Below, in pieces: positions 45,619 to 64,000 of a stretch of DNA of 64,000 nt. Every line of letters begins with the position of its first letter. Within the stretch, counting starts at the first letter, position 1. The notes under the pieces are model-generated. The model worked only from the letters and a program-made list of their open reading frames with translations. It did not search any database and was not told the DNA's origin. The DNA is from Selaginella moellendorffii (Eukaryota > Plantae > Lycopodiophyta), in NCBI RefSeq assembly GCF_000143415.4, contig NW_003314304.1, forward strand, positions 1,112,047-1,176,046, read 5' to 3'. The position numbers were made by a program, and so were the translations under genes.

Positions 45619-48064
45619 ATGGCAATGGAGGGGGAATCGCAGCGAAATCTCTCGGATTCCCGGCGAAATATTTCCAAGAAGGATCAGGAGCGCAGCGCAA
45701 GCAGGCTGGAGAGGCTAGCGTCTCACATGGCGGCTGTGCCGCTGGTCAGGGAAGCGCAGCTCGCGCGGCAGGAGTGCGCCAAGGTGAAGATCAAGCACCA
45801 GGTCCACGTCTCGACGCTGGTGGAATTCTTGACTCAGGGCCATCAATCCGAGCAGGAGAAGGTCTATCGATTCTTTCTCGAGCGGCCTCACTTGCAAACC
45901 CCGGTGGAAATTCACAAGGACAAGCACAGGGAGCTGTGTATGAGGCAGCTCACTGCGGTGGTCCGTGAGGCTGGGATTCGTCCGATGGATCTTCTTCTCA
46001 ACGATCCCGCGAGCTACTTCGTTTTCACTGAGGCGATTGGGCACATCGATCTCTCGCTTGCGATCAAGCTGGGTGTGCAATTCAGGTAAGAAAGGTTTCT
46101 TCTTTACTATTCTATCTTGACAATGTGTCACTTTAGTCTCTGGGGTGGTAGCGTCATCAATCTTGGAACGAAAAAACACCGTGACAAATACTTGGCTGGT
46201 ATATCAAATCTCGATTATCCAGGATGCTTTGCAATGACGGAGTTGCATCATGGTATGTGATCTTGGCTTTTGTTCTTCTCTGCAACGTTGCTGAAAAATT
46301 GGTTCTTTATCCAGGTTCCAACGTTCAAGCATTGCAAACCACTGCGACTTTCGACAGGCTCACGGACGAGTTCGTGATCAACACTCCCGACGAAGGTGCG
46401 ACTAAATGGTGGATTGGAAACGCTGCGGTCCATGGCAAGTTCGCTACCGTTTTTGCTCGGCTCAAGCTTCCTTCGCCGGACTCGCATCTGGACAAAGACA
46501 TGGGCGTGCACGCCTTCATTGTTCCCATCAGAAGTATGGAAGATCACTCCGTTCTTCCTGGTGTGGAAATCCGCGACTGTGGCTACAAAGTTGGTCTCAA
46601 CGGTGTCGACAATGGTGCATTACGATTCAGCAACGTCAGGATTCCCCGAGACAATCTCTTGAACCGGTTTGGCGACGTTTCAAGGGATGGAGAGTATAAC
46701 AGTTCGCTGCCAACCGTGAACAAGAGGTTTGCAGCTACACTTGGGGAATTGGTTGGAGGAAGAGTTGGGCTAGCCTATGGATCAGTCGGTGTTCTAAAAG
46801 CATCCGTCACCATTGCCATCCGGTATGCGCTTCTCAGGCAACAATTCGGCCCTCCAAACAAGCCAGAGATCAGCATACTCGACTACCAGTCTCACCAGCA
46901 AAGATTGATGCCACTGCTAGCTTCGACTTATGGTTTTCACTTTGCTACCCAGTACCTGGTGAACAGATATGCCGAGATGAAAGTTACGCATGACGACGAG
47001 GTGGTCGCAGATGTTCACGCTCTCTCTGCGGGTCTCAAGGCGTACATTACTTCCTACACGGCGAAGGCATTGAGTACTTGCCGAGAAGCTTGTGGTGGAC
47101 ATGGTTATGCAGCAGTGAATCGATTCGGCAGCCTCCGAAACGATCATGACATTTTCCAGACGTTTGAAGGGGACAACACGGTTTTGCTACAGCAGGTAAG
47201 ATTGACAACTATTTGGCTTGTGGAATCTGTGGTTGCTCATTTCCTTAAAACTTTCTCATTTCAGGTAGCTGCAGACCTTTTGAAGCAGTACAAGGAGAAG
47301 TTCCAAGGAGGTGCCTTGAGTGTGACATGGAACTATTTAAGAGAATCAATGGGGACTTACTTGAACCAGACAAATCCTGTCGTGACGCATCGAGAAGGCC
47401 ACGGCCATCTCCGAGATCCCAACTTCCAGCTTGACGCTTTTCAGGTTCGGTATCAACAGCTTTCAGTCAGTTTCAGTTGGTCAACTGATATTATTTCGGT
47501 TTGTTTCGCAGTACCGGACGGCAAGGCTGCTCCACACTGCTGCGTTGCGCTTGCGCAAGCACTCCCAACGCTTAGGAAGCTTTGGTGCATGGAATCGCTG
47601 CTTGAACCACCTCCTCACTCTGGCCGAGTCACATATTGAATCCGTCATTCTTGCAAAGTTCATTGAAGCTGTCAACCGGTAAGTTGTTCTCCCGTTTCGT
47701 CTCCAGGTATGAAAGTTTTCGTGTGTTGCAGTTGCCCGGACAAAGATGTCCGCTCGCTGCTCAAGCTAGTGTGCGACTTGTATGCTCTGGATCGAATCTG
47801 GGAAGACATTGGAACGTATAGAAACCAGGACTACGTTGCACCAAACAAAGCCAAGGTGAGTAAGAAACTCTGACACAATTCAAGCTTAACACGTTTTCTT
47901 TGTCGCAGGCTATCCATCGTTTGGTGGAGTATTTATCTTACGAAGTCCGCGGCGTTGCCAAGGAACTGGTCGACGGTTTTGGAGTGCCCGATTTCGTGCT
48001 GAGAGCACCGATCGGCCTGCAAAACGGGCAGTACTCGGAGTACATGCAGTACGTTGGCTTTTGA
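45619..48064 (+). CDS. ACX2: Peroxisomal acyl-CoA oxidase 2-like (long-chain)
   Basis: PTS2-like RLERLASHM; [54 protein letters not shown]; ends QYVGF*. Confidence 0.94.
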
Positions 48065-48156
48065 GTAAAACAGTTTGAAGAGAGGGAGCCGGCTAGAAGA
48101 GAGGCTATGCACTGTATTCATCCTAGAGATCTCTTTACAGCAAAACTTTCCGGGAG

Positions 48157-48903
48157 CTACGACGAGGTGGTAAATCGCTTGAGGTACTCTGGATCCTTCT
48201 TTGCCTTGTCTTGAAACTTCTTGAACCATTTCTCCAGGATGTCGAGCGGGACAACCATCCTCCCATTCTCCTGGCTGCAAAACGACTGCATGAAGTTGAA
48301 GAGATTCTCGCCAACCTTGAGCGCCAGATCCTCCACCTTCTTGTAGTTGCCAACGTTGAGAGCCGGGAGCGAGACGAGGTCCTCCACCGCGAGGCCGATC
48401 TTGGCAGTGAGTGGCTGCGTCTCGGAGGCCATGATTTGCATCTGGCCGCCGGGCTTTGGCCACAGCAGCGTCACCACTGCCGAGGGACAAGCCTTGTGGA
48501 CGGCTCCACAGTACTGGAACTGCGATCCCGGGGACTGGACGTAAACCGCCAGAGCTTTCTCCGGAGGGAGCGAGAGCTCGTTGAGAAGGAAGATACACAT
48601 TTCTTTCACTTCCTCGTACCCTTCTCCTGTGTAACCAAGAGGAAAAAACTTTAGAGAGAGCTCTCTTCGAAAAAACTAAAGACCAAGCAAGAAATGATAG
48701 CCTCTCGGGAAGAAGAGAGAAGAAAGAATGAGCTCTCTTCTCTCGTTCTTCGCAATTTCAAGCAACGAAGCAAAGGATTTCTTCGCAAACTCAGACTTAC
48801 CCAGGAAAACGCTCATGTCGAGCACCCAGTGCGCAATGTCGATCTGTTGGAAGCTCGCGGCGTCCATCGGGAAGCTGCGATTCGGGAAAACCACCCCAAA
48901 CAT
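48157..48903 (-). CDS. OPI10/Hikeshi-family protein (DUF775); exons 48903-48801 and 48626-48157
   Basis: MFGVVFPNRSFP, CIFLLN..LPP.KALAVY, AKIGLAVE, LALKVGENLFNFMQSF, ILEKWFKKFQ. Confidence 0.92.
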
Positions 48904-49156
48904 CTTGTGCCAAGCCAGAGACTCAAATGCGCGCCAAATCGCCAGTAATCCCTGCTACCATACCCGTCGCAATTTCATCACAGGCGCGCGCCACGCCCTC
49001 CCTGCGAGCTGGAAGAATCGCGAGCTCGCGACACGCAAACCCTAGTGACAAAGAAAGTACAAAACTCGAATCGGACGGTTCCAGAGGGTTCTAGAAAAGA
49101 ATTTGGAATTTACACGAAATCGGGCGGCTGGCATGCATCGTGTTCCTTGGGTTCTC

Positions 49157-50636
49157 CTAGCTCTTAGCGATACATCTGCGAAGCCTGGATCCAAACAGCG
49201 CTCCGGCGCAGCGTTGCACGTATCCAGCAAGATCTCTAGTCGGTCTTCGCGGCGGATAGAATGCGCTCTTCCTGTAAGGCGGATCATCTGCTCTGGATTG
49301 CCGCTGGAGAAACTGGTGGAAAGTACTCCCGTTCCGGAGCGAATCGTTCTTCGACTGGATCACCGCGGTCATGTCCAGATTGCCCGAGTTCGCTCCAGCG
49401 AACCAGGGCGTCACCTCCTTCTTGGATCCCGCCACGAAGACGTTGAACTCGCTCAAGATGGTGGCGGTCACTCGAGCTCCCAGCGCGTAGTATCCCCAGT
49501 TGGAGTAGAGATTGTTGACGACGTGACAGTAGCCGAATCGGCAGTGCGGCATCCTCTGCGTGGAATCGCGGAACCAGTTGCGAAAGACGGTCACTCGCAT
49601 CACGCTGTCCTGGCGATCGCTGTCCGAGGCGCCGAGGAGCATGTTGAAATCGCGGTTGGAGAGGTAGCAGTTCGAGATGGTCACGTCGGTGGATCCCTGG
49701 ACGACCGAGACGAGGCCCTCCGATCCGGAGAAGCTCGTAAGGTGGTCGATCCAGATGCGCTTGGATCCCGCGAAGACGTGCACGGTGTCGGTCTCTGGAA
49801 CGCTGTTGATCTGGAAGTTGTGGAGGATGACGTTGGTGACGCCGGCGAGGACGATGGAGCGGCCGGTGATGGTGATGTTGCTGCCGCGGCCATCGATGGT
49901 GGTATCGCTCCGGATCCACAGCATCTCGCGGAGCTGGATGATCATGGTCTTGGAGAAAGTTATCCACACTCCACCGGACTTGGGATTCAAGCTCACTCCG
50001 TAGCGCAGGCTTCCCTTTTGTGGATCCGTGGGATTGTCGTCGGGCCGGGTGACGACGTAGGATCTTCCATTGGCACCGCCGGTGAGACCGCCAGCGAAGC
50101 CGTAAGCGCAGGATGGGAGCGCGCGGCCGGAGCCACATTGGAACTGGCAAGTGGTTCCATCGCTGTTACACCTGGCTGCTCGAAAGGAAACAATGGAACT
50201 TAGTTCGAAGATTTGTGAAAAGTTCTGTGGATGGATGCTTACTTGGTGATGCTGCTGCCTGGAGGAGCGCTCGGCTCGGACGTCTGTTCTCTTCCTCCAA
50301 AGTTCTACCTCGGGTTACCTGGTGAGACAAAGAAGAAAAGATGAAGAAATCGTTGTATAACTGTGGAAGAAGAACGTATGATCTTATACCTGAGCGCATG
50401 AAGCTCCATCGCTCGTGCATTTTCCTGCTAGCAAAGATCGTTTGAGATGCTTAAACTTCTGTCAATGCTTACTAGACGAGTGCAGCTGGAGAGATCCGCT
50501 CGGTTCCTCCAAGGTTCTTACCTGGAAGAACATCAAAAAGCTTTTACCGCGATGGAGAATCATCTCATCTTACCTTGGAGCAAACTCCAGCATTTGCATG
50601 GATCAAAGCCACGAGAAGTAGCAACAGTAGCCCCAT
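49157..50636 (-). CDS. Secreted pectate lyase-like protein (PL1), 5 exons
   Basis: Reconstructed with matching phases: signal peptide MGLLLLLLVALIHANAG (50636-50574), three short exons, then GFAGGLTGG..GSLRYG..TIDGRG..WIDH..STDVTISN..QRMPHCR..HVVNN. Confidence 0.9.
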
Positions 50637-51292
50637 CCAAAGAGAGCTCTAAGTTCCTTTCTGCTACTCCAAAACCATTCCCAGGCGATGGAACTGGTGA
50701 AAGAAGAGCTACAAGTAGTGGAAGACGAAGAAGAAGAAGAAGAAGAGTATTCTTCTTCACACCTTCCGGGAAAAGAATTCGCTCGAAGTGCATCAATCCA
50801 CGCCAGTGCCAGGCCGCGCAAGCCGATTCCAAGCAATGGAAAAATCGCCACAAAGTGGAGGTGATATTCCCGCGAGGCCTTCTTTGCGTGCACGCCCGCC
50901 ATGGCCACCGATCCAACGGACTTGCCCCGGGATCGCCAATTGTTTAATCGCGAACGCGAGCGATCGTGAGCGCCAGAATGTGCGTCGTTTGACAATGCTG
51001 CTCCATCCAGACCTTCTCGCTCGCGAAAGCTTCCTCGCTCCATTGACTTGTCGCTGCGCCAAGCTTCCAGCGCAATCTTCGTGATCGCCAAAGGAGAAGG
51101 AAGGAATTCTAAACAAATGCCTCAAAGCTAACGTTAGAACCCTAGCAAATATTTTAGGGTTCTTGGCAATTTGGAGGGAGGCCGCCTCGTCTAGCGGCAA
51201 GTAAGCGAGATTCTTGTGCTGGGATTTAGGTAGAATGCGAGGCACAGGCCACAGATTTACTCCGAGCTTCATCGAATCGGAAAAGTTTTGGA

Positions 51293-52666
51293 TCATTTCT
51301 CCAGCTTGGGAGCTTCTGCCACAACAAGATCGACGAAATTATGCCCAGGATCGTCGAAATCTTGCTTGCTGGGGACGAGGTCGATCGCAGGACGGTCGAA
51401 ATCTTGCTCGCCCGTGACGACGGCGGCAGCATTGATCTCCATCGCTGCGGTCTCTGCATGGCCACTGGGGACGGGGCCGCAGCGATGATCCAGCCAGAGA
51501 ATGGCGATCCCAGAGGCGAAATACGTCGCCTGTGCCAATCCCAGGCGAGCGAAGAACATCGCGCTGGCAAGCTGTGGCCGGGCCGCTGGAAAAGAAGGGT
51601 CCAGGACGCTACTTCCGGCGCCAGTCTGATGATTCCCATGAACAGGAGCTTGATCCGGTAGCGTCGAGTGCCAAGCTCCTTGTGTTCGTGGGCATCGTGG
51701 GCCAGGACGTAGAGTGGCGAAGCAAAGGAGCTCATGAAGGCCGCGATCACTGCCCGGGTGGATTGTTTGAGGTTTATCTTGGGTCCCCGTGTGAGAACTA
51801 GCCAGAAGAGGAGCCACTGGAGGATGGTGGAGAGAAGGACGAGCACGAAGGGAAAGTATGAGGCTCCCGTGATCGTGAAGACCGAGCAAGAGATGGCACT
51901 CAGCAGGATGGCTGATCCAATATGAAGGCCTGCAAGGAAGAAAACAGTGAATCCGGCTTGAAAAAGCTTGTCTCTCTTCGACCTGCGAGGATTGCTACGC
52001 CAGCTTTCTTCTTCCACGAGGTTGCGTTGTTTGTTTTGGACGTCACCGCAATGCTTCCATTCAGAGCTCCGGAGACCAGCGTGGCTATGATCCCGAGGAT
52101 GAGAACTGGTGAGATGGAGGAGTTACCGGGTGAAGAGAGCCTCTTTTTGTAGATGGCATCATACTCGATCGCGAGTGCCTGGCTGGACTTGACGGTCAGC
52201 ATAACGATGCTGAAGAGCGTGCTCTTGGTGCTCATCTCTCGCCTGGCAACCAGGAAGGATCTTCATCAGGGTAGTGAAGGTACGAATCTTCTATTTTTTT
52301 CGTCTCGATGAATCTATTGTTGAATTGAAGAAGAAAGAACTCTTACCGGTCGATGGACGCTTTTGGATGTCGAGCCAAGTTCCATAGCTGTATGAGCGGG
52401 AAGAAGAGCGCAGATTGGATTGGCTGCTGCTCGACAGGTATGTTCAACTTGAAAACCACGACACTGATTATCTGAGATCCGATCGAAGCGACGAGCAGGA
52501 AGTAGAAATTCCACCTCAGCAACTGATCAGGAAACTTGTAGTATTGAACAAGAGTGATGACAGTGAGGATACCATCAGCCAAGTAAGAGCCAGCAGAGAA
52601 GATCACTCGCACGGGCTCGATCGCAGCAACGAGCGCTTTGGCAGAAGGCATTCCCGAGACAGCCAT
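51293..52666 (-). pseudogene. Multipass membrane protein, XK-related-like, copy 1 (1-bp frameshift near 51575)
   Basis: 3 exons, collinear with 54424-55859. ggccgggcc here versus ggccggggcc in copy 2 shifts the last helix and tail out of frame. Confidence 0.65.
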
Positions 52667-52964
52667 CAAAGTCTTGGTGTAAGTCTTGTATACTTCTATA
52701 ATGTGTGCACTCGTCAAAGGTGTGCGCCGGATTGACATCATATGGTGGTCGTCACATCAGAGTGTAAGTCGTCTCACATCGCGGTACTGTCGCTTTTACT
52801 TTGATTTCATTGCTTCTTGTGATGTTGGAATTTGACTCCGTGCGGTCCTTAAATTTGATTCCTGTGCATTCCAACATTCGGATATATTGGAAGAAGTCAC
52901 GGCTTCCCTACCACCAAAACCACGAAGGTATTATCAAGCGTTTGGATGTTCTCTCAGTGCTGCG

Positions 52965-53787
52965 TCACCACTGCCGAGGGACAAGCCTTGTGGACGGCTC
53001 CACAGTACTGGAACTGCGATCCCGGGGACTGGACGTAAACCGCGAGATGGTGGTGTCGCTCCGGATCCACAGCATCTCGCGGAGCTGGATGATCATGGTC
53101 TTGGAGAAAGTTATCCACACTCCACCGGACTTTGGATTCAAGCTCACTCCGTAGCGCAGGCTTCTCTTTTGTGGATCCGTGGGATTGTCGTCGGGCCGGG
53201 TGACGACGTAGGATCTTCCATTGGCACCGCCTGTGAGACCGCCAGCGAAGCCGTAAGCGCAGGATGGGAGCGCGCGGCCGGAGCCGCATTGGAACTGGCA
53301 AGTGGTTCCATCGCTGTTACACCGGGCTGCTCGAAAGGAAACAATGGAACTTAGTTCGAAGATTTGTGAAAAGTTCTGTGGATGGATGCTTACTTGGTGA
53401 TGCTGCTGCCTGGAGGAGCGCTCGGCTCGGACGTCTGTTCTCTTCCTCCAAAGTTCTACCTCGGGTTACCTGGCGAGACAAAGAAGAAAAGATGAAGAAA
53501 TCGTGGTATAACTTTGGAAGAAGAACGTATGATCTTATACCTGAGCGCATGAAGCTCCATCGCTCGTGCATTTTCCTGCTAGCAAAGATCGTTTGAGATG
53601 CTTAAACTTCTGTCAATGCTTACTAGACGAGTGCAGCTGGAGAGATCCGCTCGGTTCCTCCAAGGTTCTTACCTGGAAGAACATCAAAAAGCTTTTACCG
53701 CGATGGAGAATCATCTCATCTTACCTTGGAGCAAACTCCAGCATTTGCATGGATCAAAGCCACGAGAAGTAGCAACAGTAGCCCCAT
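52965..53787 (-). pseudogene. Truncated pectate lyase-like copy fused out of frame to an OPI10 fragment
   Basis: Signal peptide and short exons retained. Frame leaves homology after RSDTTI and stops at 52965. Confidence 0.88.
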
Positions 53788-54423
53788 CCAAAGAGAGCTC
53801 TAAGTTCCTTTCTGCTACTCCAAAACCATTCCCAGGCGATGGAACTGGTGAAAGAAGAGCTACAAGTAGTGGAAGACGAAGAAGAAGAAGAGTATTCTTC
53901 TTCACAACTTCCGGGAAAAGAATTCGCTCGAAGTGCATCAATCCACGCCAGTGCCAGGCCGCGCAAGCCGATTCCAAGCAATGGAAAAATCGCCACAAAG
54001 TGGAGGTGATATTCCCGCGAGGCCTTCTTTGCGTGCACGCCCGCCATGGCCACCGATCCAACGGACTTGCCCCCGGATCGCCAATTTTTTAATCGCGAAC
54101 GCGAGCGATCGTGAGCGCCAGAATGCGCGTCGTTTGACAATGCTGCTCCATCCAGACCTTCTCGCTCGCGAAAGCTTCCTCGCTCCATTGACTTGTCGCT
54201 GCGCCAAGCTTCCAGCGCAATCTTCGTGATCGCCAAAGGAGAAGGAAGGAATTCTAAACAAATGCCTCAAAGCTAACGTTAGAACCCTAGCAAATATTTT
54301 AGGGTTCTTGGGAGTTTGGAGAGATCGCCTCGTCTAGCGGCAAGTAAGCGAGATTCTTGTGCTGGGATTGAGGCACAGGCCGCAGATATACTCCGAGCTT
54401 CCTCGAATCGGAGATGTTTTGGA

Positions 54424-55859
54424 TCATTTCTCCAGCTTGGGAGCTTCTGCCACAACAAGATCGACGAAATTCTGCCCAGGATCGCCGAAATCTTGCTTGC
54501 TGGGGACGAGGTCGATCGCAGGACGGTCGAAATCTTGCTTGCTGGGGACGAGGTCGATCGCAGGACGGTCGAAATCTTGCTCGCCCGGGACGACGCCGGC
54601 AGCATTGATCTCCATCGCTGCGGTCTCTGCATGGCCACTGGGGACGGGGCCGCAGCGATGATCCAGCCAGGGAATGGCGATCCCAGAGGCGAAATACGTC
54701 GCCTGTGCCAATCCCAGGCGAGCGAAGAACATCGCGTTGGCAATCTGTGGCCGGGGCCTCTGGAAAAGAAGGATCCAGGACGCTACTTCCGGTGCCAGTT
54801 TGACGATTCCCATGAACAGGAGCTTGATCCGGTAGCGTCGAGTGCCAAGCTCCTTGTGTTCGTGGGCATCGTGGGCCAGGACGTAGAGTGGCGAAGCACA
54901 GGAGCTCATGAAGGCCGCGATCACTGCCCGGGTGTATTGTTTGAGGTTTATCTTGGGTCCCCGTGTGAGAACTAGCCAGAAGAGGAGCCACTGGAGGATG
55001 CCGCTGGTGGAGAGAAGGACGATCACGAAGGGAAAGTATGAGACTCCCGTGATCACGAAGACCGAGCAAGAGATGGCATTCAGCAGGATGGCTGATCCAA
55101 TATGAAGGCCTGCAAGGAAGAAAACAGTGAATCCGGCTTGAAACAAAGAGAGAAAAAGCTTGTCTCTCTTCGACCTGCGAGGATTGCTACGCCAGCTTTC
55201 TTCTTCCACGAGTTTGCGTTGGTTGTTTTGGACGCCACCGCAATGCTTCCATTCAGAGCTCCGGAGACCAGTGTGGCTATGATCCCGAGGATGAGAACAG
55301 GTGAGATGGAGGAGTTACCGGGTGAAGAGAGCCTCTTTTTGTAGATGGCATCATACTCGATCGCGAGTGCCTGGCTGGACTTGACGGTCAGCATAACGAT
55401 GCTGAAGAGCGTGCTCTTGGTGCTCATCTCTCGTCTGGCAACCAGGAAGGATCTTCATCAGGGTAGTGAAGGTACGTATCTTCTATTTTTTTTCTTCTCG
55501 ATGAATCTATTGTTGAATTGAAGAAGAAAGAACTCTTACCGGTCGATGGACGCTTTTGGATGTCGAGCCAAGTTCCATAGCTGTATGAGCGGGAAGAAGA
55601 GCGCAGATTGGATTGGCTGCTGCTCGACAGGTATTTTCAACTTGAAAACCACGACACTGACTATCTGAGATCCGATCAAAACGACGAGCAGGTTGTAGAA
55701 ATTCCGCCTCAGCAACTGATCAGGAAACTTATAGTATTGAACAAGAGTGATGACAGTGAGGATACCATCAGCCAAGTAAGAGCCAGCAGAGAAGATCACT
55801 CGCACGGGCTCGCTCGCAGCAACGAGCGCTTTGGCAGAAGGCATTCCCGAAACAGCCAT
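54424..55859 (-). CDS. Multipass membrane protein, XK-related-like, copy 2 (apparently intact, 3 exons)
   Basis: Splices atcgaccg|gtaag...gaag|atcc and ctcgcag|gtcg...ttgcag|gcc give one open frame with 8-10 hydrophobic segments and an acidic repeat tail. Family call is by eye. Confidence 0.65.
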
Positions 55860-56269
55860 CAAAGTCTTGGTGTAAGTCTTTTATGCTCCTTCGTAAAATA
55901 TTTCTATAATGTGTGCACTCGTCAAAGGTGTGCGCCGGATTGGCATGGTCGTCACATCAGAGTACTTACAAAGGCACGTATAAGTCGTCTCACGTCGCGG
56001 TACTGTCGCTTTTACTTTTCTTGTGATGTTGGAATTTGACTCCGTGCGGTCCTTAAATTTGATTCGTGTGCATTCTAACATTCAGAAGTCAAGACTTCCC
56101 TACCACTAAAACCACGAAGGTACTATCAAGCGTTTGGATGTTCTCTCAGTGCTGAGTTTTCATATTGCAGCTATGGATGCAGGTTGCAGTAAGGATGTGA
56201 AGCTTGGCTCTGGGATCGGTGGCAAGCAGCTGTCTGCTCCAACTGGAAACAAGGCTCATGTAGCAACTT

Positions 56270-57700
56270 TGGTACAAAATGTTGCTATCTTGTGAGCTAT
56301 TGCTCCAAGGAATGTCAGAAGGAGGACTGGCCAGAGCCCAAGAAGGCCTGTAAGTCGGAGCTGATGGTTGAGCAGTACGTGCCTTCGTGGGTTACGTCCG
56401 TCTTCGTGGTTCACGGGCTCTTTGCAAAGGTTTGGACAAGCACCCTGGGGAAATGTGCCTGCACACGGCCTGCTAAGCAGAGATGGCTTTCAGCCTCCGG
56501 AAGAGCGGAGCTTTTGTTTTGCAGCACCAGCAGATCTACTTAACGCCATAGAAACGGTGTGCCGACTCCCAGATTCTTTCAGTGGCCGGGCAACTTTCTA
56601 CGTCAACGACTGGAATCCTCAAGTCGCAGTGAAGAACTTCCTCATGATCGAGCTGCTCAGGACCTTCGGAAGGGACGCTATTGATGCTGTGATAGCTCTT
56701 TGGTACTCCTCATGCCTCACGTCTCAGCAGAACGCCGCGATCGACGATCTGGCACGCTGGGTTCTATCGAAGAAGAGCTCAGATGATCCCAAGCGCTCCA
56801 AGCTTTCTCTGGTTGCAAGCTTTGGAAACAAAGTCTGGGCGCTCTTGAGGACGTCGTTCCAGTTCCTGGACTAAAAGAAACTGCACTGGAGACGAGGTGG
56901 AGGGTGATGGTTGGCCGTCCCGACTTGTTGGAACGCAAGCTCGTTCTTCTCCAGGCTCTCTTGGAACGACTACCGCCACTCGGGAATGCTCCTACGCGGC
57001 AACGCTAGAACACCGACGAGCTAACAAGTAACTCCTCCATCCCGAGCTCGGCTGGACCATGAGCGATTCAGCTGAGCCTCTCGACGGCTGTCTATGCACG
57101 ACATCTTTGCATCTGGCGAGAAGTATGGAGCCTCTACGAAGAACCTCTGCGGCTGCCTCTTCTTCCACGTTGACAGCCCTGCTCACCAAGCTCGAGGTAT
57201 GCGAGTTACGTTCAAGTTCTTCTCTGCTGCGACGCTAGTGAGCTCGCACAGGATGGATTAACCTTCCAGGGGATCGACACATCAAACTTGGCAGATGCGA
57301 TATACGTTGGGATTGAGAGGATTCTCACGGACTGGGGGCCGCTGCTGGGTGTGAGCTTACAATCTCGCTCATGAACTGGGCGAAAGATCGTTCTTTCAGT
57401 GAAGCTGCTGCACACCACACCTCCTCGAGCGTAAAGGTTCGTGTTTCATGGACAAGTGGATGCTATGCATAAACTCTGCGGTGGTAGAACTCTTCCCCGA
57501 CAACAGTGAGGAGTTCCAGGAGTATCTGGAGTCACGAAACGCGATCGTTGCAGCGCGACGGCTAGGAAAGAGCACAAAGTTGCGCCAGGGAGGCTCTCGG
57601 ATCTAGAGAGCTGCGTTCCTAGCATTGGCGCCAGTGACGACGAGGTTGACTGCCTTGTTTGTGTGGTAACTTAGCGAAAGGTTCATCGAGTGGATCCCCG
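56270..57700 (+). pseudogene. MYND zinc finger + DUF4470-type protein pseudogene
   Basis: YCSKECQKEDWP..KKACK, WGNVPA, FAAPADLLNAIETV..LPDSFSG..YVND.NP.V..N.L, IALWYS, IDTSNLAD..VG..WGPLL. Frameshifts and stops. Confidence 0.75.
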
Positions 57701-57810
57701 GCTCAGCGTTGAATCGCCATCTCCGACTTATTTAGTACTAGTTCTACCACCGCAGAGTTTATGCATAGCATCCACTTGTCCATGAAACATGAACCTTTAC
57801 GCTCGAGGAG
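57421..57810. repeat. 71-bp inverted repeat (arms 57421-57491 and 57740-57810, 1 mismatch)
   Basis: ctcctcgagcgtaaaggttc...ggtggtagaact and its reverse complement. Confidence 0.92.
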
Positions 57811-57946
57811 AGGAGTTGTCTCTGCACAAATCGTCACGTCTGTTTTTAGTGTTCGTCTATGCTTTGCATTGTCGTTTCCATTTTTAGGCTGTATATATTA
57901 GAAGGGAAGATTAATGAGAGTGTGAGTGATTGGTGTTTGATAATCC

Positions 57947-58392
57947 ATGGCTAGTTCAAGCCTTGCTGTGCTCTGCATTTCTCTTGTGGTCTTGTCTGCA
58001 GGATTAGTAGCTTTGGCAGAAGGTAAATTAATAGAAATTTGTTAGTGTTAGTCAAAATTTATTTCTATTCAGATTTTAAAGAGGATGAATATGATATTAA
58101 GCATTATGTCAAAAGTGGTGTTGCCAGAGATGAATATAAGACTTCAGTCGCATCACAGCATCATATATATGAAGATGATAATATAGGGTAATAGTTCTTT
58201 CTATTTATTTTTCTTTTGGCAATAACAAATGTATGCAGGTCAATGTCTGGTGAGGAGGAGGAAAGTGTTAAAGGTTCTGGTATCTATAACTTTTGCAAGT
58301 TTTTCTGTAGAAAGGGCTTATTCCTATGGAAAGTTTGCAAGTCATGCCCTGCTTCTGCTCCAGCTCCAGCTCCATCTTCTAACCATCACTAA
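57947..58392 (+). CDS. Small secreted Cys-rich peptide precursor, 114 aa; exons 57947-58022, 58073-58187, 58239-58392
   Basis: GT-AG introns of 50 and 51 bp with matching phases; signal peptide; TATA-like tatatatta ~55 bp upstream; aataaa just after the stop. Confidence 0.82.
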
Positions 58393-59019
58393 GAAAAATT
58401 GACTCTTTATAATAAAAAATAGAATAATTGTTACATTATTCCTTATATTCAATTGCACAAATTGTTTCATATAATGCATTGTTATGTTTAACTATGATAT
58501 CTGAGCTCGCACAAGAGAAATTCATGGTAGGATTGCATTAATTTATTAGCACAAATGACTTATGCTCATTAAACTTCTTTTTTAGCAATAATTAAAAAAA
58601 TAGTTAATCAAAACTACAGCTTAGTATATGATATTTTACACATTCCAAGTTTCTACTTGTGGTGAAGGAGGGCAATGCTCCATTAATGGATTAGGAAATG
58701 AAATTCATACCAAAACAAGCTCAAGGTGAGGAGTATGATATTACAATAGCACCCCCAATTTCTTTCAGCGAAAAAATAAGTATCTAATAAACTCTCAAAA
58801 GGCATAAGCAGTAAGAAGCATCAAATTGTGGTCAAACAAAGCCCTCCTCCAATTGCTAGTACACACTCACAAAGGTAATTCACTCTAGTTAAACTCATGG
58901 CTCTATGGATTAGAAAGTTGAGAGATTATTTAATAGCATTATTTACTAAATAAAAAACTTCCTAATGCTCAATGTAGAAGCCAAAAATACATGTGGAACC
59001 TCTATTGTATCCTGCCTGG

Positions 59020-59200
59020 AATTTACCATATTTGCAAATTCTTACCACTCACTACACCACTTACCATAGTAAAATCTTAGAGCAAGGGAATCCTTGGCCA
59101 TGCCTTGCAGTGCTCCTCGATCGTTCAAAGATCCAAGGAAATCCAGTATATAAGCAGTGCAAGCAAAGGATCCAGCAACCTATGGCACAAGCAATGGTGG
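59020..59200 (-). repeat. Dispersed repeat homologous, in inverted orientation, to ~63800-63960
   Basis: Shared tgccataggttg..ggatcc.ttgcttgcact, tggatttcc..ggatctttgaac.atcgaggagcac, tttgcaaatat..aaattcc. Confidence 0.75.
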
Positions 59201-59274
59201 TGCAAAGCAATGTTTGTTGATTGTGTACAGCCATTTGTGGCCAACTAAACCCTAAACCCAAGGTGAAAGAATGC

Positions 59275-61575
59275 ATGATCTCCAGAGCTACGCTACCAAA
59301 AACGGGGAGTGGGCTGCTCCCGCAATCGATCGATCCGAGCGTCTTGGCCAGGCTAGGCCACAAAGATCTCGAGCTCGACAACGATGTCTACGCCACGCTC
59401 CTCCGCGAATGCGAGAGATCCAAATCGCTCTCGCAGGGGCGATACATCCACGCTCACATCCTCGCCAGTGGCAAGAGCGGCAAGACGTTCCTGGGAAATC
59501 TCCTGGTCCGGATGTATGGCAAATGTGGCTCCATCGCCGATGCCAAAGCGGCCTTCGATCAGATCCATCGCAAGAACGTCTTCTCCTGGACGATCATGCT
59601 CGGGGCGTTTGCCGATTGTGGGCATCACAGGCAGGCGATCCAGATCTATCACGCCATGGTTCTCGAGGGAGTGAGGCCGGATTGCGTCGCCTTCGCATCC
59701 ATCGCGGGGATTTGCTCGGAGCTGCAGTGTTTCCAAGCGGGCAAGGCGATCCACGACTGCGTGCTCGAGCAAGGCGCCGAATCCGACGTGATCGTCGCCA
59801 ACAATCTCGTCACCATGTACAGCAAATGCGGCCGAATCGATGAGGCTAGATGCGTGTTTCGCCGGATCAAGAACAAGAATCCAGTGTCTTGGAACGCGAT
59901 TATTGCAGCATTTTCCCAGTGTGGAGATTTTGCGAGCGCGCTGGAGTTCTACGTCGAGCATCCCGTGCCTGACAAGATCACGCTCATTCTGGCAGCGAAA
60001 GCGTGCGCTAGCTTGGGGGATCTCGATCGAGGCCGGGAGATCCATGCCAGAGCCGTGGAGCTGGGATTGGAATCGGACCTCCTGGTGGCCAACAGTCTGA
60101 TCGGGATGTATGGCAAGTGCTACTGCGTGGGTGATGCCAAGCGCTTGTTCGATGGATTGGATGCCAAGAACAGGGACGTGATCTCCTGGAACTCGATCAT
60201 CGCGGCTTATATCTTGGCCGGGATGAGCTCGCAGGCGCTGGAGCTCTTCCGGGAGAGAATGGATGTGGAGCCGAATAGGATCACTTTCATCGCGCTGATT
60301 GATGCCTGCTCGACCCTGTGCGATCTCGAGCAGGGAAGATGGATCCACGAGAGGATTCGCAGCTCGGAATTTGAGAGAGAGGTGGCAGTGGAGAACGGTC
60401 TACTGCTCATGTACGCCAAGTGTGGGAGCATCGAGGAAGCGATGGCGATCTTCGAGAGCATGGAAGGGAGACGAACGGTCTCTTCCTGGAATTCGATGAT
60501 CGCTGCTTGGGCGAGTCAAGGAGATCGAGATGGCAGTAGCAGTGACGAGGTTTTACGGATCTACAACAGGATGAGCTTGGAAGGATTGAAGGCTGACAAG
60601 ATCACTTTCGTGAGCTTGGTGACGATTTGCAAGGATATCTTGCACGGAAGGAGGATTTTCGAGCAGATCATCGCTGCTGGGATCGTTCTAGAGACGGAGA
60701 TGGAGCTCGCAACGAGCTTGGTGATCATGTACTGCAAATTCGGCTGCGTGCGCGACGCGATGGCAGTTTTCTCTGGGATGAGATCAAGAGATGTGGTGGC
60801 CTGGACAGCGATGATCACGGCTTTCTCGCAGCAAGAACACACGAGCATGGAGGCCGTGGATTACTTTTGCCGGATGGACTTGGATGGATCCAAGCCCGAC
60901 GAGGTGACTTTCGCCAGCGTTCTTGGATCGATTGCTCGATTGGGTCTTCTCTCCAGAGGAAGATCCGTCCACTGCGATGTTCTAGCCTGTGGATTTCAAT
61001 CCGATGTCGTGGTGGGCACTGCGCTGCTCGACATGTACAGCAAATGCGGGAGCTTGATCGATGCCAAGCGCGCGTTTAACGATCTGGGAGGCTCCAGGAA
61101 TCTCGTCTCCTGGAACGCGATGATCGCCGCCATGGCCAAGCATGGCGATTGGAGCTCCGGCTTCGAGCTCTACCGCGCCATGATCCTCGAGGGAGTGAGA
61201 CCCAACGATGTCACATTCACCAACATGCTCTTCCTGTGCAGTCACGGCGGTGGTGGCGATCGAGAATGCGGCATCTGGGACGGTTGCGCATCGATCGTGC
61301 TCGAATTCGGCGTCAAGATCACGCCCGATCACCACTGCTCGATCGTGGATGTTCTTGGGCGATCCGGGCGGCTCGAGGAGGCAGAGGAATTCGTGGACAA
61401 GGGGATGGGATTCGAGCCGGGGATCGTCGAGTACCGTACGCTCCTGGGGAGCTGTACGGTTGCTTGCGACATGGAGAGAGGCGCGCGCGTGGCGCAGCGC
61501 GTCATGGAAATCGAACCTCAAACTTCCATGGCATATTCACTGCTGGCCAAGATTTTGAGGAGGTTTTGTAGCTAG
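59275..61575 (+). CDS. PLS-class PPR protein with E domains, no DYW, intronless
   Basis: Canonical P-L-S triplets (LV.MY.KCG....A..F....VSW), LCSHGG, HHCSIVDVLGRSG, YRTLLGSC. Confidence 0.94.
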   Translation: MISRATLPKTGSGLLPQSIDPSVLARLGHKDLELDNDVYATLLRECERSKSLSQGRYIHAHILASGKSGKTFLGNLLVRMYGKCGSIADAKAAFDQIHRKNVFSWTIMLGAFADCGHHRQAIQIYHAMVLEGVRPDCVAFASIAGICSELQCFQAGKAIHDCVLEQGAESDVIVANNLVTMYSKCGRIDEARCVFRRIKNKNPVSWNAIIAAFSQCGDFASALEFYVEHPVPDKITLILAAKACASLGDLDRGREIHARAVELGLESDLLVANSLIGMYGKCYCVGDAKRLFDGLDAKNRDVISWNSIIAAYILAGMSSQALELFRERMDVEPNRITFIALIDACSTLCDLEQGRWIHERIRSSEFEREVAVENGLLLMYAKCGSIEEAMAIFESMEGRRTVSSWNSMIAAWASQGDRDGSSSDEVLRIYNRMSLEGLKADKITFVSLVTICKDILHGRRIFEQIIAAGIVLETEMELATSLVIMYCKFGCVRDAMAVFSGMRSRDVVAWTAMITAFSQQEHTSMEAVDYFCRMDLDGSKPDEVTFASVLGSIARLGLLSRGRSVHCDVLACGFQSDVVVGTALLDMYSKCGSLIDAKRAFNDLGGSRNLVSWNAMIAAMAKHGDWSSGFELYRAMILEGVRPNDVTFTNMLFLCSHGGGGDRECGIWDGCASIVLEFGVKITPDHHCSIVDVLGRSGRLEEAEEFVDKGMGFEPGIVEYRTLLGSCTVACDMERGARVAQRVMEIEPQTSMAYSLLAKILRRFCS

Positions 61576-61609
61576 GGTTTATGGCTACGTCGCCAGATTT
61601 TCCATCGTC

Positions 61610-61825
61610 TCTGTATATGCAGCTACGATGAGCGTACGATTGTTCCGCTCCATTACAAGCAGCATTGGATTGCTCTTCCAGGAAGGAGCAAGAAAACAAC
61701 GAGGAGGCTGGCGGCTGTCTGTATATGCAGCTACGATGAGCGTACGATTGTTCCGCTCCATTACAAGCAGCATTGGATTGCTCTTCCAGGAAGGAGCAAG
61801 AAAACAACGAGGGGGCTGGCGGCTG
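61610..61825. repeat. Near-perfect 108-bp tandem duplication
   Basis: ctgtatatgcagctacg... starts at 61611 and again at 61719. Confidence 0.95.
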
Positions 61826-63264
61826 TGGGGAATTCCAACAAAGTAAGTATGAGAGACCTGGCGTTCTTGGGACACGCGCTTTGCAAATCAGGTGAGTGAG
61901 AACCTTCTCTCGCGTTTGGTCTGGTTTGATCCTGATGTCACCCTGTTCTACAGCAACCACCATAAACATACCCTCGTCTTGTCGCAAGAGACTCTACCGT
62001 TTGGAGTGGATTATTAAAGACTTATTAAGCGGATCTGTCTCTCCATAGCGTTCATACTGGAGCATATTCGGTATTGCCGATCTTTCGTTCACGCAGCTCC
62101 TTCATAGCAATCTGCAGAGAACATTCAAGAGCTCCATCACTCCACACAAATTCCTTTTCAGAGTTTCTATACCTCGAGTGGATCTCGAGTGAAGTTTTGG
62201 CTTTCTTAGCGAAGAATCGTGCAGAATCTGGCAAGGTATAATCTGAAAAGTATAAGCTAAAATGCATTTCTTTTGTCTTCTTTCATTCTCCATGGTATGT
62301 GGGACTTCTCTCAGCATATCCCGAGCTGCATATCCAGTGATTCAAAGCAAAGTCTCACCCTTATACCCCTCTTTGATGATGGGCGGGCAATTAGCACACC
62401 ATTATTCTTCCATGTCTTGTCTTTCTCTAGTCGGCCACCCAGAATATAAAATGCGACCACCACCTCCATTGCAAACTCCAGAGGGAAGGCTCCAAACTTT
62501 TGAGTGAGCAAAGGGCTCTCACCTCGAGAACTCGGACAAGCTCTCTCGAATCCAAGCTTGGCTCCTTTCGTTATTCTTCTCCTCTTCGTCCCCTTTCAAG
62601 AGTAAGCTTGGTTTGTTTGGTCTTTGCTCTCGTGGTTCTGAGCTTGTGATTCTTTCAGTTTTCTTGCGCCAGAAATCGGGACTCCGACGAAACAAAACGT
62701 TCCACTTCCAGAAAGAGTACGTGCCTCACTTCCTTCCATGCTCAAGTGATTCTTTCATTTCCCTTTCGCTCGCATAAGTTACTCGTGTTGACAGTGTATA
62801 ACTGTGTAACTTATGACAGCCTCTTTTCATGTAGATTTCCTGACAATCCCTGTCTCCTTTTTGTTGCTCCAGAGGCCAATGGACATGGATTGCTTGCTTC
62901 TTCTCTCCTCTTGCACTCCGCCGCGTCAGTTTCACTCGGGAAAACGTATGTAATTGTTCGTTGGCCGCGGCGAGAAATGAAGGCTTTCCCGCTTTTCTCC
63001 AGAGATGATCTTAAGACGCTGTTTTCTTGTGAGAACCGGTACTGGTGCTCCTCCCCAGCACCATGCAATTTTTTATGATTCCACGCCACCATTTGTCTCG
63101 TCATATGCTCACTGCCGCTGTTCTTCTTCACCTGCTTCCAGAGCACGGGCGACACAAAACTTTGAAGGGGCATTGTCAACTTGACACCATTTCCACCAGG
63201 TATTTCATCTCTTGGTTGATCGTTTTCTTGACGATGCTCGCCTCAAGTAACCAAGCTTTCAGGC

Positions 63265-63522
63265 ATGGTGAACCTCCAGAAGCAGCTTGAGAATCAGCTC
63301 GTCCCAGAGTGGCGGGTGAATTACTGCGACTACAAGCAGCTCAAGAAAGTTGAGATTCTACAGGTCGATCCAAAGGTCTTCTCGGTTGACAAGAGCAAGC
63401 TCCAAAACTTGCTGCAAAATCCCAGCGCCATCCTGAGCAGCTGCTGCGAAGGAAACTTCCATGCTTTTCGGGGTCCAAAACGCGTGATTGTGGGAAGTGA
63501 GACCACTTACTTCAGACAATGA
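63265..63522 (+). pseudogene. SPX-domain N-terminal fragment (PHO1-like)
   Basis: MVNLQKQLENQLVPEWRVNYCDYKQLKK matches the SPX start. No continuation visible. Confidence 0.7.
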
Positions 63523-64000
63523 AAAACAAAGCTCATGCATGGACATTTCCTGTGGTGCCACACAACATATGTTTGACTGAGATGATACAAAGAAATTTTA
63601 TACCATTTTGAGCTCTTGTTTAACGAGATCCTTGGGAGAAGCTTTTGGAAGTTCTTAAGTAGTGTCCTATCTGATAGAATAGTGTAAAATTATCAAATTT
63701 TACTTACAAAGTTTTGATCGTTCTTTTCAATATTCAAGATCCCAATATCCTCTACATTAATCTAGTGTCAACTTAAATTAAACTGCCATTGCTTGGGACC
63801 ACAATAGCTTATGCCATAGGTTGTGGGATCCATTGCTTGCACTAGAGCAATTCGTTACATTGGATTTCCTTTGGATCTTTGAACAATCGAGGAGCACCAG
63901 GATTTCAATATGGTGGCATTAAGAATATTCACTATATTTGCAAATATAACAAATTCCTTTTTTGTATGTAAACTTTTAAGTACAAAAAAACCAAATATCA

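What the first reader, a model, noticed from the sequence alone, without database searches (positions are those of the whole stretch)
57947..58392. Unannotated 3-exon precursor of a cationic 4-Cys peptide (antimicrobial-peptide-like)
Seen: absent from the ORF track. Splicing gives signal peptide MASSSLAVLCISLVVLSAGLVALA, an acidic pro-region (EDFKEDEYD...EDDNIGSMSGEEEESVK), a basic aromatic core GSGIYNFCKFFCRKGLFLWKVCKSC (C-x3-C-x9-C-x2-C) and a PASAPAPAPSSNHH tail. Known: signal + acidic prodomain + cationic Cys core is typical of defence-peptide precursors; alpha-hairpinins use Cx3C..Cx3C; AP repeats are arabinogalactan glycomodules. Inference: a spacing I do not recognise, possibly a new lineage-specific peptide family.
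Basis: partly seen in the sequence, partly recalled or inferred. Interest (0 to 1): 0.78.

Follow-up and report, generated by a model that had tools for sequence, protein, structure and literature searches.

The report
Spikemoss secreted four-cysteine peptide gene
A small three-exon gene of the spikemoss Selaginella moellendorffii most likely encodes a secreted precursor whose positively charged four-cysteine hairpin evolves fast while its Ala-Pro tail stays fixed; it is already in GenBank (mis-modelled at this locus), belongs to a tiny family seen only in this species, and its function, probably defence, is untested.

Summary

"Unannotated" is wrong. The window is Selaginella moellendorffii scaffold GL377608.1. 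This locus is annotated as SELMODRAFT_419700, with an extra 31-nt intron that frameshifts out the cysteine core. A divergent paralog with two cysteine modules is hidden in a fused model (SELMODRAFT_431071).

- **Gene structure:** all four copies keep intact frames, the same intron positions and phases, and a shared TATA block.
- **Selection:** amino-acid changes pile up in the 25-residue core (9 non-synonymous, 1 synonymous). The rest of the protein has 2 and 5. The 14-residue tail changes only synonymously.
- **Relatives:** none were found outside this species. Pfam and PDB give no match.
- **Fold:** AlphaFold predicts helix-loop-helix modules, but the alpha-hairpinin motif is not met (CX3C-X9/10-CX2C).
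- **Expression:** no transcript evidence could be obtained.

My reading is a real, lineage-restricted secreted cysteine-rich peptide, probably for defence, with an arabinogalactan-type tail. The scan has noted other Selaginella families built of CxxC/CxxxC modules elsewhere in this genome. Interest is modest.

The parts
57890..57911 (+). Conserved TATA-box block (TGTATATATTAGAAGGGAAGAT), about 55 nt upstream of the ATG. Inferred core promoter.
   Evidence: The block T-TATA(T/A)ATT(A/G)GAAGG(G/A)AA is shared by all four copies, including the divergent L004 paralog, whose 5' flank is otherwise unalignable.
57947..58022 (+). Exon 1. It holds the start codon, a 24-residue signal peptide (57947-58018, predicted cleavage after Ala-Leu-Ala) and the first residues of the pro-region. 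It ends in phase 1.
   Evidence: Translation. Residues 6-24 have a mean Kyte-Doolittle value of 2.7, with small residues at -3 and -1. The exon is 100% identical in the allele and has 1 change in paralog L001. The signal peptide is 75% identical in L004.
58023..58072 (+). Intron 1, 50 nt, GT...AG, 20% GC.
   Evidence: It has 5 substitutions against the allele, while both flanking exons have none.
58073..58187 (+). Exon 2. Acidic pro-region containing the block YV-x-SGVA-x-D-x-Y-x-TS, which is conserved in the divergent paralog. It ends in phase 2.
   Evidence: Translation. Net charge of the in-frame part is -4. There are 0 changes against the allele and 1 against L001. The block is visible in the tblastn alignment to L004.
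58188..58238 (+). Intron 2, 51 nt, GT...AG.
   Evidence: Its length varies among the copies (51, 53, 61 and 54 nt), whereas the exons of the three close copies have no indels.
58239..58392 (+). Exon 3. It encodes the acidic stretch SMSGEEEESVK, the core, the tail and the TAA stop.
   Evidence: Translation; alignment A2 of the four copies.
58273..58347 (+). Core of 25 codons (residues 76-100), net charge +5, Cys pattern C-x3-C-x9-C-x2-C. Predicted helix-loop-short helix.
   Evidence: Charge. AlphaFold2 on A2 gives helices at exon-3 residues 3-25 and 30-34, with pLDDT about 80 over the core. Among the three close copies there are 9 non-synonymous and 1 synonymous changes here, against 2 and 5 in the rest. 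Fourteen framework positions (K75 just upstream of the core plus 13 core residues, including all 4 Cys) are invariant in all four copies.
58348..58389 (+). Tail PASAPAPAPSSNHH (residues 101-114), with non-contiguous Pro residues in Ala-Pro and Ser-Pro context. Inferred Hyp-arabinogalactan glycomodule.
   Evidence: 13 of 14 residues are identical in the divergent paralog L004. Only synonymous changes occur among the close copies. The glycomodule rule comes from PMC7769824. Glycosylation itself was not tested.
58280..58310 (+). The 31-nt 'intron' used by the GenBank model SELMODRAFT_419700. It removes Cys 1 and 2 and shifts the frame. I judge it spurious.
   Evidence: P0002 diverges from the three-exon product after ...VKGS into the +1 frame. 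The AG acceptor is lost in paralog L001, where AGA becomes GGA. Substitutions in the tail fall on third codon positions of the three-exon frame.
58411..58416 (+). AATAAA, 19 nt after the stop. Candidate polyadenylation signal (inferred).
   Evidence: Read. The A-rich AATAA block is kept in all four copies.

Best explanation
This is a functional three-exon gene of Selaginella moellendorffii for a 114-residue secreted prepropeptide.

**Inferred route**
1. The 24-residue signal peptide is removed after Ala-Leu-Ala in the ER.
2. An acidic pro-region (residues 25-75, net charge about -8 including the two junction residues) accompanies and masks the basic part.
3. Cleavage near the conserved K-x-S-G releases a C-terminal product of about 39 residues.

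**The product**
- It has a +5, aromatic-rich 25-residue core folded as a two-disulfide helix-loop-helix. By analogy with alpha-hairpinins the bonds would be Cys1-Cys4 and Cys2-Cys3.
- It has a 14-residue (Ala/Ser-Pro) tail whose prolines are likely hydroxylated and arabinogalactosylated.
- A fixed Cys/aromatic scaffold carries fast-changing surface residues. This is the pattern of host-defence peptides, so an antimicrobial or other anti-biotic role in the apoplast or cell wall is the most likely function.

**Shown:** gene structure, conservation pattern, family membership and absence of known relatives.

**Inferred:** secretion, processing site, disulfides, glycosylation and activity.

My estimates are: real coding gene about 0.85, secreted cysteine-rich peptide about 0.8, defence as the function about 0.4.
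For: **Structure and translation:**

**Identity of the window:** it is 100% identical to GL377608.1.

**Four intact copies:** all have GT-AG introns at the same positions and phases.
- Allele: L003 / SELMODRAFT_430142, collinear with the window at 95-97%.
- Paralog: L001 / SELMODRAFT_426361.
- Divergent paralog: L004, 144 residues.

**Purifying selection on the gene as a whole**
- Exons 1 and 2 show 0 changes against the allele, while the introns show 7.5-10% difference.
- No exon of the three close copies has an indel. Both introns apart from intron 1, and all flanks, have them.

**Shared promoter block:**

**Core versus rest**
- Core: 9 non-synonymous and 1 synonymous changes. Rest: 2 and 5. 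Fisher p = 0.035.
- Non-synonymous changes per site: p = 4e-5.
- pN/pS is about 2 in the core and about 0.1 elsewhere.
- Thirteen of the 25 core positions, including all four Cys, are invariant even in L004.
- The tail changes only synonymously.

**Signal peptide features and charges:**

**Predicted fold**
- Helix-loop-helix for the window's exon 3, with pLDDT 78-81 over the core.
- Helix-turn-helix for the extra CxxC-x9-CxxC module of L004, with pLDDT 84-88.

Against: - **No evidence of transcription.** Neither the exact 114-residue products of the allele and paralog, nor any near-identical protein, occurs on any contig other than the genome assembly in a 15-billion-protein collection that includes run assemblies. 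No paper names the locus tags.
- **Small counts.** The selection contrast rests on 17 substitutions among three close copies. It could partly reflect relaxed constraint, or gene conversion homogenising exons 1 and 2.
- **Cationicity is not conserved.** The L004 core is only about +2 and its extra module about +1 (my counts from the sequence).
- **The tail is the best-conserved part,** which would fit a function carried by the tail rather than the core.
- **The structure evidence is weak.** The models have moderate confidence and come from 4 or 1 sequences. Cys-Cys distances could not be inspected. Fold searches returned only generic helical hairpins.
Confidence: 0.45

Rival explanations
1. It is a signalling peptide precursor. 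The conserved C-terminal 14-mer (Pro/Ser-rich, ending in Asn-His-His), alone or still attached to the disulfide hairpin, is the ligand of a receptor kinase. This would work as in plant post-translationally modified peptides (CLE, IDA, CEP, RGF), whose conserved, Hyp-containing active peptide sits at the C-terminal end of a variable precursor and often ends in His or Asn. That last comparison is from my own knowledge.
For: - The tail is the most conserved segment: 13 of 14 residues are identical in the divergent paralog, and only synonymous changes occur among the close copies.
- The cationic charge of the core is not conserved in L004.
- The pro-region keeps a Tyr-containing acidic block.
- Copy number is low, unlike many expanded defence families.
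Against: - The tail matches no known peptide-hormone motif. It lacks the CLE Arg1/Gly6, the IDA PSxxxRHN and the CEP or PIP Gly-His endings (my comparison from memory, not a tool test).
- The Cys/aromatic framework directly upstream is also invariant, so the core is not a mere spacer.
- Fast non-synonymous change next to a ligand is unusual for hormone precursors, unless the core counts as 'variable region'.
- The family was not found outside one species, whereas land-plant peptide hormones are usually widely conserved.
Confidence: 0.2
2. It is a small chimeric arabinogalactan protein. The Ala-Pro tail carries a large type II arabinogalactan, and the disulfide hairpin is a wall- or membrane-binding head. 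The role would be structural or in cell-surface signalling rather than antimicrobial.
For: - The tail is a textbook AG glycomodule by the Hyp contiguity rule and is under strong purifying selection.
Against: - There are only three or four candidate Hyp sites.
- There is no GPI signal, because the C-terminus is hydrophilic.
- Structural roles do not explain a pN/pS of about 2 in the head.
- Glycosylation is untested.
Confidence: 0.15
3. It is not an expressed gene. It would be a silent or decaying duplicate whose open frame survives only because the copies are young or homogenised by gene conversion. Alternatively, the GenBank four-exon model (107 residues, no Cys core) is the true product.
For: - No transcript-derived copy of any family protein exists in the protein collection.
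- No literature mentions it.
- Exons 1 and 2 are nearly identical among three copies even at synonymous sites, which gene conversion could produce.
- A decayed fragment copy exists in L001.
Against: - The divergent L004 copy (exon identity 66-81%, flanks unalignable) keeps the frame, both intron positions and phases, the signal peptide, all four Cys, the tail and the TATA block. That requires long-term selection on the three-exon reading frame.
- The 31-nt intron is shorter than the 42-61-nt introns of all four copies. Its acceptor is lost in L001.
- The shifted frame it creates is not the one in which the tail is conserved.
Confidence: 0.12

Closest known systems
Alpha-hairpinins (plant 4-Cys helix-loop-helix defence peptides such as EcAMP1, MBP-1, MiAMP2 and Sm-AMP-X)
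   Same: - Four Cys arranged as two close pairs, with the first pair being CX3C.
- A loop of 9-10 residues, within the family's X4-20 range.
- A predicted helix-loop-helix.
- A basic, aromatic-rich mature part.
- A precursor with a signal peptide and one module (window) or two modules (L004) separated by acidic linkers.
   Different: - The second pair is CX2C, and in the extra L004 module both pairs are CX2C. The defining motif CX3C-X4-20-CX3C (PMC11591084) is therefore not met.
- The precursor is neither vicilin-type nor a long multi-module cassette (PMC7191063).
- The gene has two introns, whereas the described Tk-AMP-X and EcAMP genes are intronless.
- It carries a conserved Ala-Pro tail.
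- There is no sequence or fold-search link.
Arabinogalactan peptides and chimeric AGPs
   Same: A signal peptide and a short stretch of non-contiguous Pro in Ala-Pro/Ser-Pro context, which is the AG glycomodule.
   Different: - The mature backbone is not just 10-13 residues. It is attached to a Cys-rich head that belongs to none of the listed chimeric classes (fasciclin, plastocyanin-like, nsLTP-like).
- There is no hydrophobic C-terminal GPI signal.
- Glycosylation is untested.
Other Selaginella moellendorffii secreted proteins built of CxxC/CxxxC modules, noted elsewhere in this scan (s1-334458, s1-418441)
   Same: The same species, secreted, with cysteines in CxxC/CxxxC pairs. One note describes CxxxC-Xn-CxxC modules and another describes arabinogalactan-type tails.
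   Different: The HMMER search with P0001 did not connect to any other annotated protein.
C-terminal post-translationally modified plant peptide hormones (CLE, IDA, CEP, RGF types)
   Same: A signal peptide, a variable middle and a highly conserved Pro/Ser-rich C-terminal 12-14-mer ending in His.
   Different: None of their signature motifs is present (comparison from memory). The conserved block includes a disulfide scaffold. The family is confined to one species.

Membership tests
alpha-hairpinin | Cys motif C1-X3-C2-X4-20-C3-X3-C4 (PMC11591084, inclusion criterion 1) | tested here: not met
   In the window, L003 and L001 the pattern is C-X3-C-X9-C-X2-C. In L004 it is C-X3-C-X10-C-X2-C, and the extra L004 module is C-X2-C-X9-C-X2-C.
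alpha-hairpinin | Helix-loop-helix fold | tested here: inconclusive
   AlphaFold2 predicts helix 3-25, a loop and helix 30-34 for exon 3 (mean pLDDT 72, 4 sequences). For the L004 module it predicts helix 2-18, a turn and helix 21-31 (pLDDT 84-88 locally, single sequence). Fold searches found only generic helical hairpins with Z of 4.6 or less.
alpha-hairpinin | Two disulfides, C1-C4 and C2-C3 | not testable with these tools
   Model coordinates are not returned. This needs MS disulfide mapping or NMR.
alpha-hairpinin | Precursor type: signal peptide plus 2-4 modules plus vicilin, or signal peptide plus a 5-12 module cassette plus a short C-terminal domain (PMC7191063) | tested here: not met
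   The arrangement is signal peptide, acidic pro-region, one module (two in L004) and a 14-residue tail. This resembles the hypothetical 'third type' that the review says had not yet been found.
alpha-hairpinin | Antimicrobial, trypsin-inhibitory or ribosome-inactivating activity | not testable with these tools
   A peptide assay is needed.
AG peptide / AGP | N-terminal signal peptide | tested here: met
   There is a hydrophobic core at residues 6-24 (mean Kyte-Doolittle 2.7) with Ala at -3 and -1. SignalP is not available, so this is a rule-based call.
AG peptide / AGP | Clustered non-contiguous Pro in Ala/Ser/Thr-Pro dipeptides (AG glycomodule) | tested here: met
   The tail PASAPAPAPSS has three Ala-Pro dipeptides plus a Cys-Pro. 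Actual hydroxylation and glycosylation were not tested.
AG peptide / AGP | Mature backbone of only 10-13 residues (AG peptide), usually with a C-terminal GPI-anchor signal | tested here: not met
   The glycomodule is fused to a conserved 25-residue Cys core. The C-terminus SSNHH is hydrophilic, so there is no GPI signal.
Any Pfam-A family or solved structure | Significant profile or sequence match | tested here: not met
   Pfam gives 0 families at E up to 10 for each exon product. The PDB profile search gives nothing below E = 6. No precomputed Pfam hit exists on P0001 or P0002 or on the L003 gene product P0003.

The most novel reading that the evidence does not exclude
The family would be a spikemoss-specific class of glycosylated disulfide-hairpin defence peptides. 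These would have an alpha-hairpinin-like fold built on CX3C/CX2C pairs and be made from a 'signal peptide, pro-region, single hairpin, C-terminal domain' precursor. That is the third precursor type which the alpha-hairpinin literature says was still awaited. The peptide would stay permanently coupled to an arabinogalactan glycomodule. It might be one branch of a larger Selaginella superfamily of CxxC/CxxxC-module secreted proteins.
Probability: 0.2. Interest if true: 0.55.

Novelty: new variant of a known kind. Interest (0 to 1): 0.35.

Why it matters
If the product is made and active, it adds a lycophyte-specific scaffold to plant host-defence peptides. The scaffold is a helical hairpin with CX3C...CX2C spacing fused to a glycomodule.

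It would also show that motif-based screens such as Cysmotif, which require CX3C...CX3C, miss relatives with shifted spacing.

In practice it corrects two GenBank gene models. SELMODRAFT_419700 has a spurious 31-nt intron, and SELMODRAFT_431071 is a false fusion with an mTERF gene.

The family is small, confined to one species so far and has no expression data. The scan has already met several other Selaginella-only cysteine-rich peptide families, so the result is useful but not surprising.

Tried and rejected
**Searches that found nothing**
- Pfam scan of each exon product: nothing.
- Word-index protein searches with the exon-3 open stretch, with P0001 and with the L004 exon 1-2 open stretch: only S. 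moellendorffii proteins, or nothing.
- Full HMMER search of 1.84 billion representatives with P0001: only P0001, P0002 and P0004.
- PDB sequence profile: nothing.
- Foldseek and VIA-align on both models: only generic helical hairpins.
- ESM Atlas: scores of 0.79 or below to glycine-rich proteins, which is chance level, and nothing for the C-terminal half.
- Metagenome scans for the exon 2-exon 3 junction and for family patterns: nothing. That collection is not expected to hold plant transcripts, so this says little.
- Literature searches for locus tags and accessions: no relevant paper.
- Paralogs inside the window: none.
- The search of earlier findings by sequence: blank.

**Readings I rejected**
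- Alpha-hairpinin membership: the motif is not met.
- GPI-anchored AG peptide: there is no hydrophobic C-terminus.
- The GenBank 31-nt intron.
- Zinc-knuckle reading of the CxxxC/CxxC pairs: unlikely for a protein with a signal peptide, though not tested.

- The joined 114-residue product of the window was never sent to a database tool. Exact look-ups of that product in the protein collection and on contigs were left out.
- The annotated allele and paralog (P0003, P0001) were used as full-length stand-ins.
- One local tblastn of the joined translation against the window itself was run.

Full report
**What is there**

The stretch 57947-58392 reads as a compact three-exon gene on the + strand.
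- Exon 1 is 57947-58022.
- A GT...AG intron of 50 nt follows.
- Exon 2 is 58073-58187.
- A GT...AG intron of 51 nt follows.
- Exon 3 is 58239-58392 and ends in TAA.

The exons sum to 345 nt with one terminal stop.
- a 24-residue hydrophobic leader ending Ala-Leu-Ala;
- an acidic region;
- a 25-residue basic core with C-x3-C-x9-C-x2-C;
- the tail PASAPAPAPSSNHH.

A TATA-type block lies about 55 nt upstream of the ATG, and AATAAA lies 19 nt after the stop.

**Where it comes from, and the annotation**

I confirmed this: window 47947-64000 is 100% identical over 16,054 nt to S. moellendorffii scaffold GL377608.1 of GCA_000143415.2. Introns of 42-61 nt are the rule in all copies of this gene.

The gene is not unannotated.
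- At this very locus GenBank has SELMODRAFT_419700 (P0002, 107 residues). It then removes a further 31 nt (58280-58310) as an intron and runs on in another frame, so it loses the cysteine core and the tail.
- The other haplotype is L003 on GL377690.1. It has the same neighbours: ACOX, Hikeshi-like, pectate lyase, DUF4470 and, downstream, PPR. It is collinear with the window at 95-97% identity.
- A paralogous segment, L001 on GL377647.1, is 83-91% identical around the gene. It carries SELMODRAFT_426361 (P0001, 114 residues).

I judge the 31-nt intron spurious for three reasons.
- It is shorter than every real intron of the four copies.
- Its AG acceptor is destroyed in L001, where AGA becomes GGA.
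- The substitutions seen in the tail are third-position changes in the three-exon frame.

**A fourth, divergent copy**

The full HMMER search found one more relative. It is the C-terminal 77 residues of a 317-residue model, SELMODRAFT_431071 (P0004), whose front half is an mTERF protein.

Reading the DNA (L004) shows a stand-alone gene at L004 11208-11738.
- It has its own signal-peptide exon, 75% identical to the window's.
- Its introns lie at the same positions and phases (42 and 54 nt).
- Its product is 144 residues.

The GenBank model is therefore a false fusion.

This paralog has the same C-terminal unit, with spacing C-x3-C-x10-C-x2-C and tail PASAPSPAPSSNHH. In exon 2 it also has an extra four-cysteine module, C-x2-C-x9-C-x2-C. 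The family is therefore modular.

**Evidence that the gene is real and under selection**
- All four copies have intact frames.
- Among the three close copies no exon has an indel. Both flanks, intron 2 and the 3' region do.
- Against the allele, exons 1 and 2 have 0 changes in 191 nt, while the introns differ by 7.5-10%.
- The TATA block and the following GAAGG(G/A)AA are shared even with L004, whose flanks are otherwise unalignable.

Alignment A2 gives an invariant signature: K-x-S-G-x-Y-(x)-F-C-K-x-F-C-x2-G-x(1,2)-F-x2-K-x-C-x2-C-P-A-S-A-P-x-P-A-P-S-S-N-H-H.

**Where the changes fall**

Counting changes among the window, L003 and L001:

| Region | Non-synonymous | Synonymous | pN/pS |
|---|---|---|---|
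| 25-codon core | 9 | 1 | about 2 |
| Other 89 codons | 2 | 5 | about 0.1 |

- Fisher's test on the table gives p = 0.035.
- Non-synonymous changes per non-synonymous site give p = 4e-5.
- The window and its allele differ by three residues, all in the core (K89R, L93P, V96L).
- The seven variable core positions avoid the 13 core positions that are invariant in all four copies.
- The tail shows only synonymous changes.

The picture is a fixed scaffold with fast-changing surface positions, flanked by conserved leader, pro-region and tail. This is the pattern seen in many host-defence peptide genes (my knowledge). The counts are small, and gene conversion in exons 1-2 cannot be excluded.

**Comparison with what is known**

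Sequence and fold searches found no known relative.
- Pfam gives nothing for any exon product at E up to 10.
- A PDB profile search gives nothing.
- The ESM Atlas gives only chance-level neighbours.
- The HMMER scan of 1.84 billion representatives returns only the three S. moellendorffii clusters.
- Word-index searches agree.
- Metagenome scans add nothing.

AlphaFold2 predictions point to helical hairpins.
- For the window's exon 3, using the 4-sequence alignment, it gives a helix over residues 3-25, a short loop and a helix at 30-34. The pLDDT is about 80 over the core.
- For the L004 extra module it gives helix 2-18, a turn and helix 21-31. The pLDDT is 84-88 even from a single sequence.
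- This is the general shape of alpha-hairpinins, but structure searches return only generic helical hairpins.

Alpha-hairpinins are defined by CX3C-X4-20-CX3C (PMC11591084). Here the second pair is CX2C, so a defining feature is tested and not met. The precursor also differs from both described types (PMC7191063). That review says that a type with a signal peptide, a single hairpin and a C-terminal domain was still awaited, and this gene has that layout. I therefore say it may work like an alpha-hairpinin but do not file it as one.

[quoted passage not shown] It lacks a GPI signal and is fused to a Cys head, so it is not an AG peptide in the strict sense.

**Most likely mechanism and rivals**

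Best reading (0.45 for the whole chain):
1. Co-translational secretion.
2. Removal of the leader after Ala24.
3. An acidic pro-region (net about -8) masks the +5 core.
4. Cleavage near the conserved K-x-S-G.
5. Release of a roughly 39-residue two-disulfide hairpin with a Hyp-glycosylated tail, acting in defence in the apoplast.

Rivals:
- The conserved tail is a hormone-like ligand (0.2).
- The product is a small chimeric arabinogalactan protein (0.15).
- The gene is silent, or the GenBank model is right (0.12).

Points against the defence reading:
- The L004 core is only about +2.
- The tail is the best-conserved part.
- There is no expression evidence. None of the family's products occurs on any contig other than the genome assembly in the protein collection, and no paper names them.

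**Context from the scan**

Other notes on this genome describe several Selaginella-only secreted cysteine-rich families. One has CxxxC-Xn-CxxC modules (s1-418441). Another has CxxC/CxxxC pairs and arabinogalactan-type tails (s1-334458). These may be kin of the present family.

Database searches were made exon by exon by reference, or with the annotated natural proteins P0001, P0003 and P0004. The joined product of the window was not sent to any database tool. The joined sequence was used only in local scripts: frame and stop checks on joined coding sequences and one local tblastn against the window itself. The substitution counts were made exon by exon.

**Verdict**

This is a real-looking, lineage-restricted secreted cysteine-rich peptide gene with an unusual hairpin spacing and a conserved glycomodule tail. 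It is already in public databases as hypothetical proteins, and the model at this locus is wrong. It is a new variant of a known kind, of modest interest (0.35).

Noticed in passing
window 57412-57491 and 57740-57819 (arms), 57492-57739 (spacer); L003 9521-9848: An 80-nt inverted repeat (94% complementary, 248-nt spacer) lies 130-535 nt upstream of the peptide gene's ATG. In the other haplotype (L003) the spacer is in the opposite orientation and the left arm appears to be missing. Paralog L001 has the window's arrangement. This looks like an inversion/deletion polymorphism mediated by the repeat, or a MITE-like element, in the gene's upstream region.
   Followed up: partly
window about 49895-52962 and 53046-56154; L003 5129-8269: The tandem duplication of about 3.1 kb (pectate lyase plus the unnamed membrane gene of note s1-421652) is present in the window's haplotype but single-copy in the other haplotype. 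L003 5129-8269 aligns twice to the window. It is therefore a copy-number polymorphism between haplotypes.
   Followed up: partly
L004 10001-11738 (GL377709.1): GenBank model SELMODRAFT_431071 (317 residues) fuses an mTERF gene to the divergent peptide paralog and skips that paralog's own signal-peptide exon (L004 11208-11289). The stand-alone gene gives 144 residues with two four-Cys modules.
   Followed up: yes
L001 16798-16902 (minus strand): A decayed, inverted fragment of the peptide gene (end of exon 2, intron 2 and start of exon 3, with no Cys core) lies 6.4 kb downstream of the L001 paralog. The homologous places in L002 and L003 lack the exon piece.
   Followed up: partly
L004 11290-11331: Intron 1 of the divergent paralog is 42 nt, a multiple of three, and has no stop codon. 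Retaining it would insert 14 residues just after the signal peptide without breaking the frame.
   Followed up: no
window 58106-58150; L004 11480-11515: Inside the otherwise divergent pro-region, the block YV-x-SGVA-x-D-x-Y-x-TS is conserved between the window gene and the L004 paralog. Its tyrosines sit next to acidic residues. The reason is unexplained; it could be a processing or sorting signal, or a sulfation site.
   Followed up: no
window 57900-59000: The peptide gene and its 3' flank form an AT-rich island (exon GC 31-47%, intron GC 20-26%) between GC-richer neighbours (DUF4470 gene upstream, PPR gene downstream, 51-55% GC).
   Followed up: no
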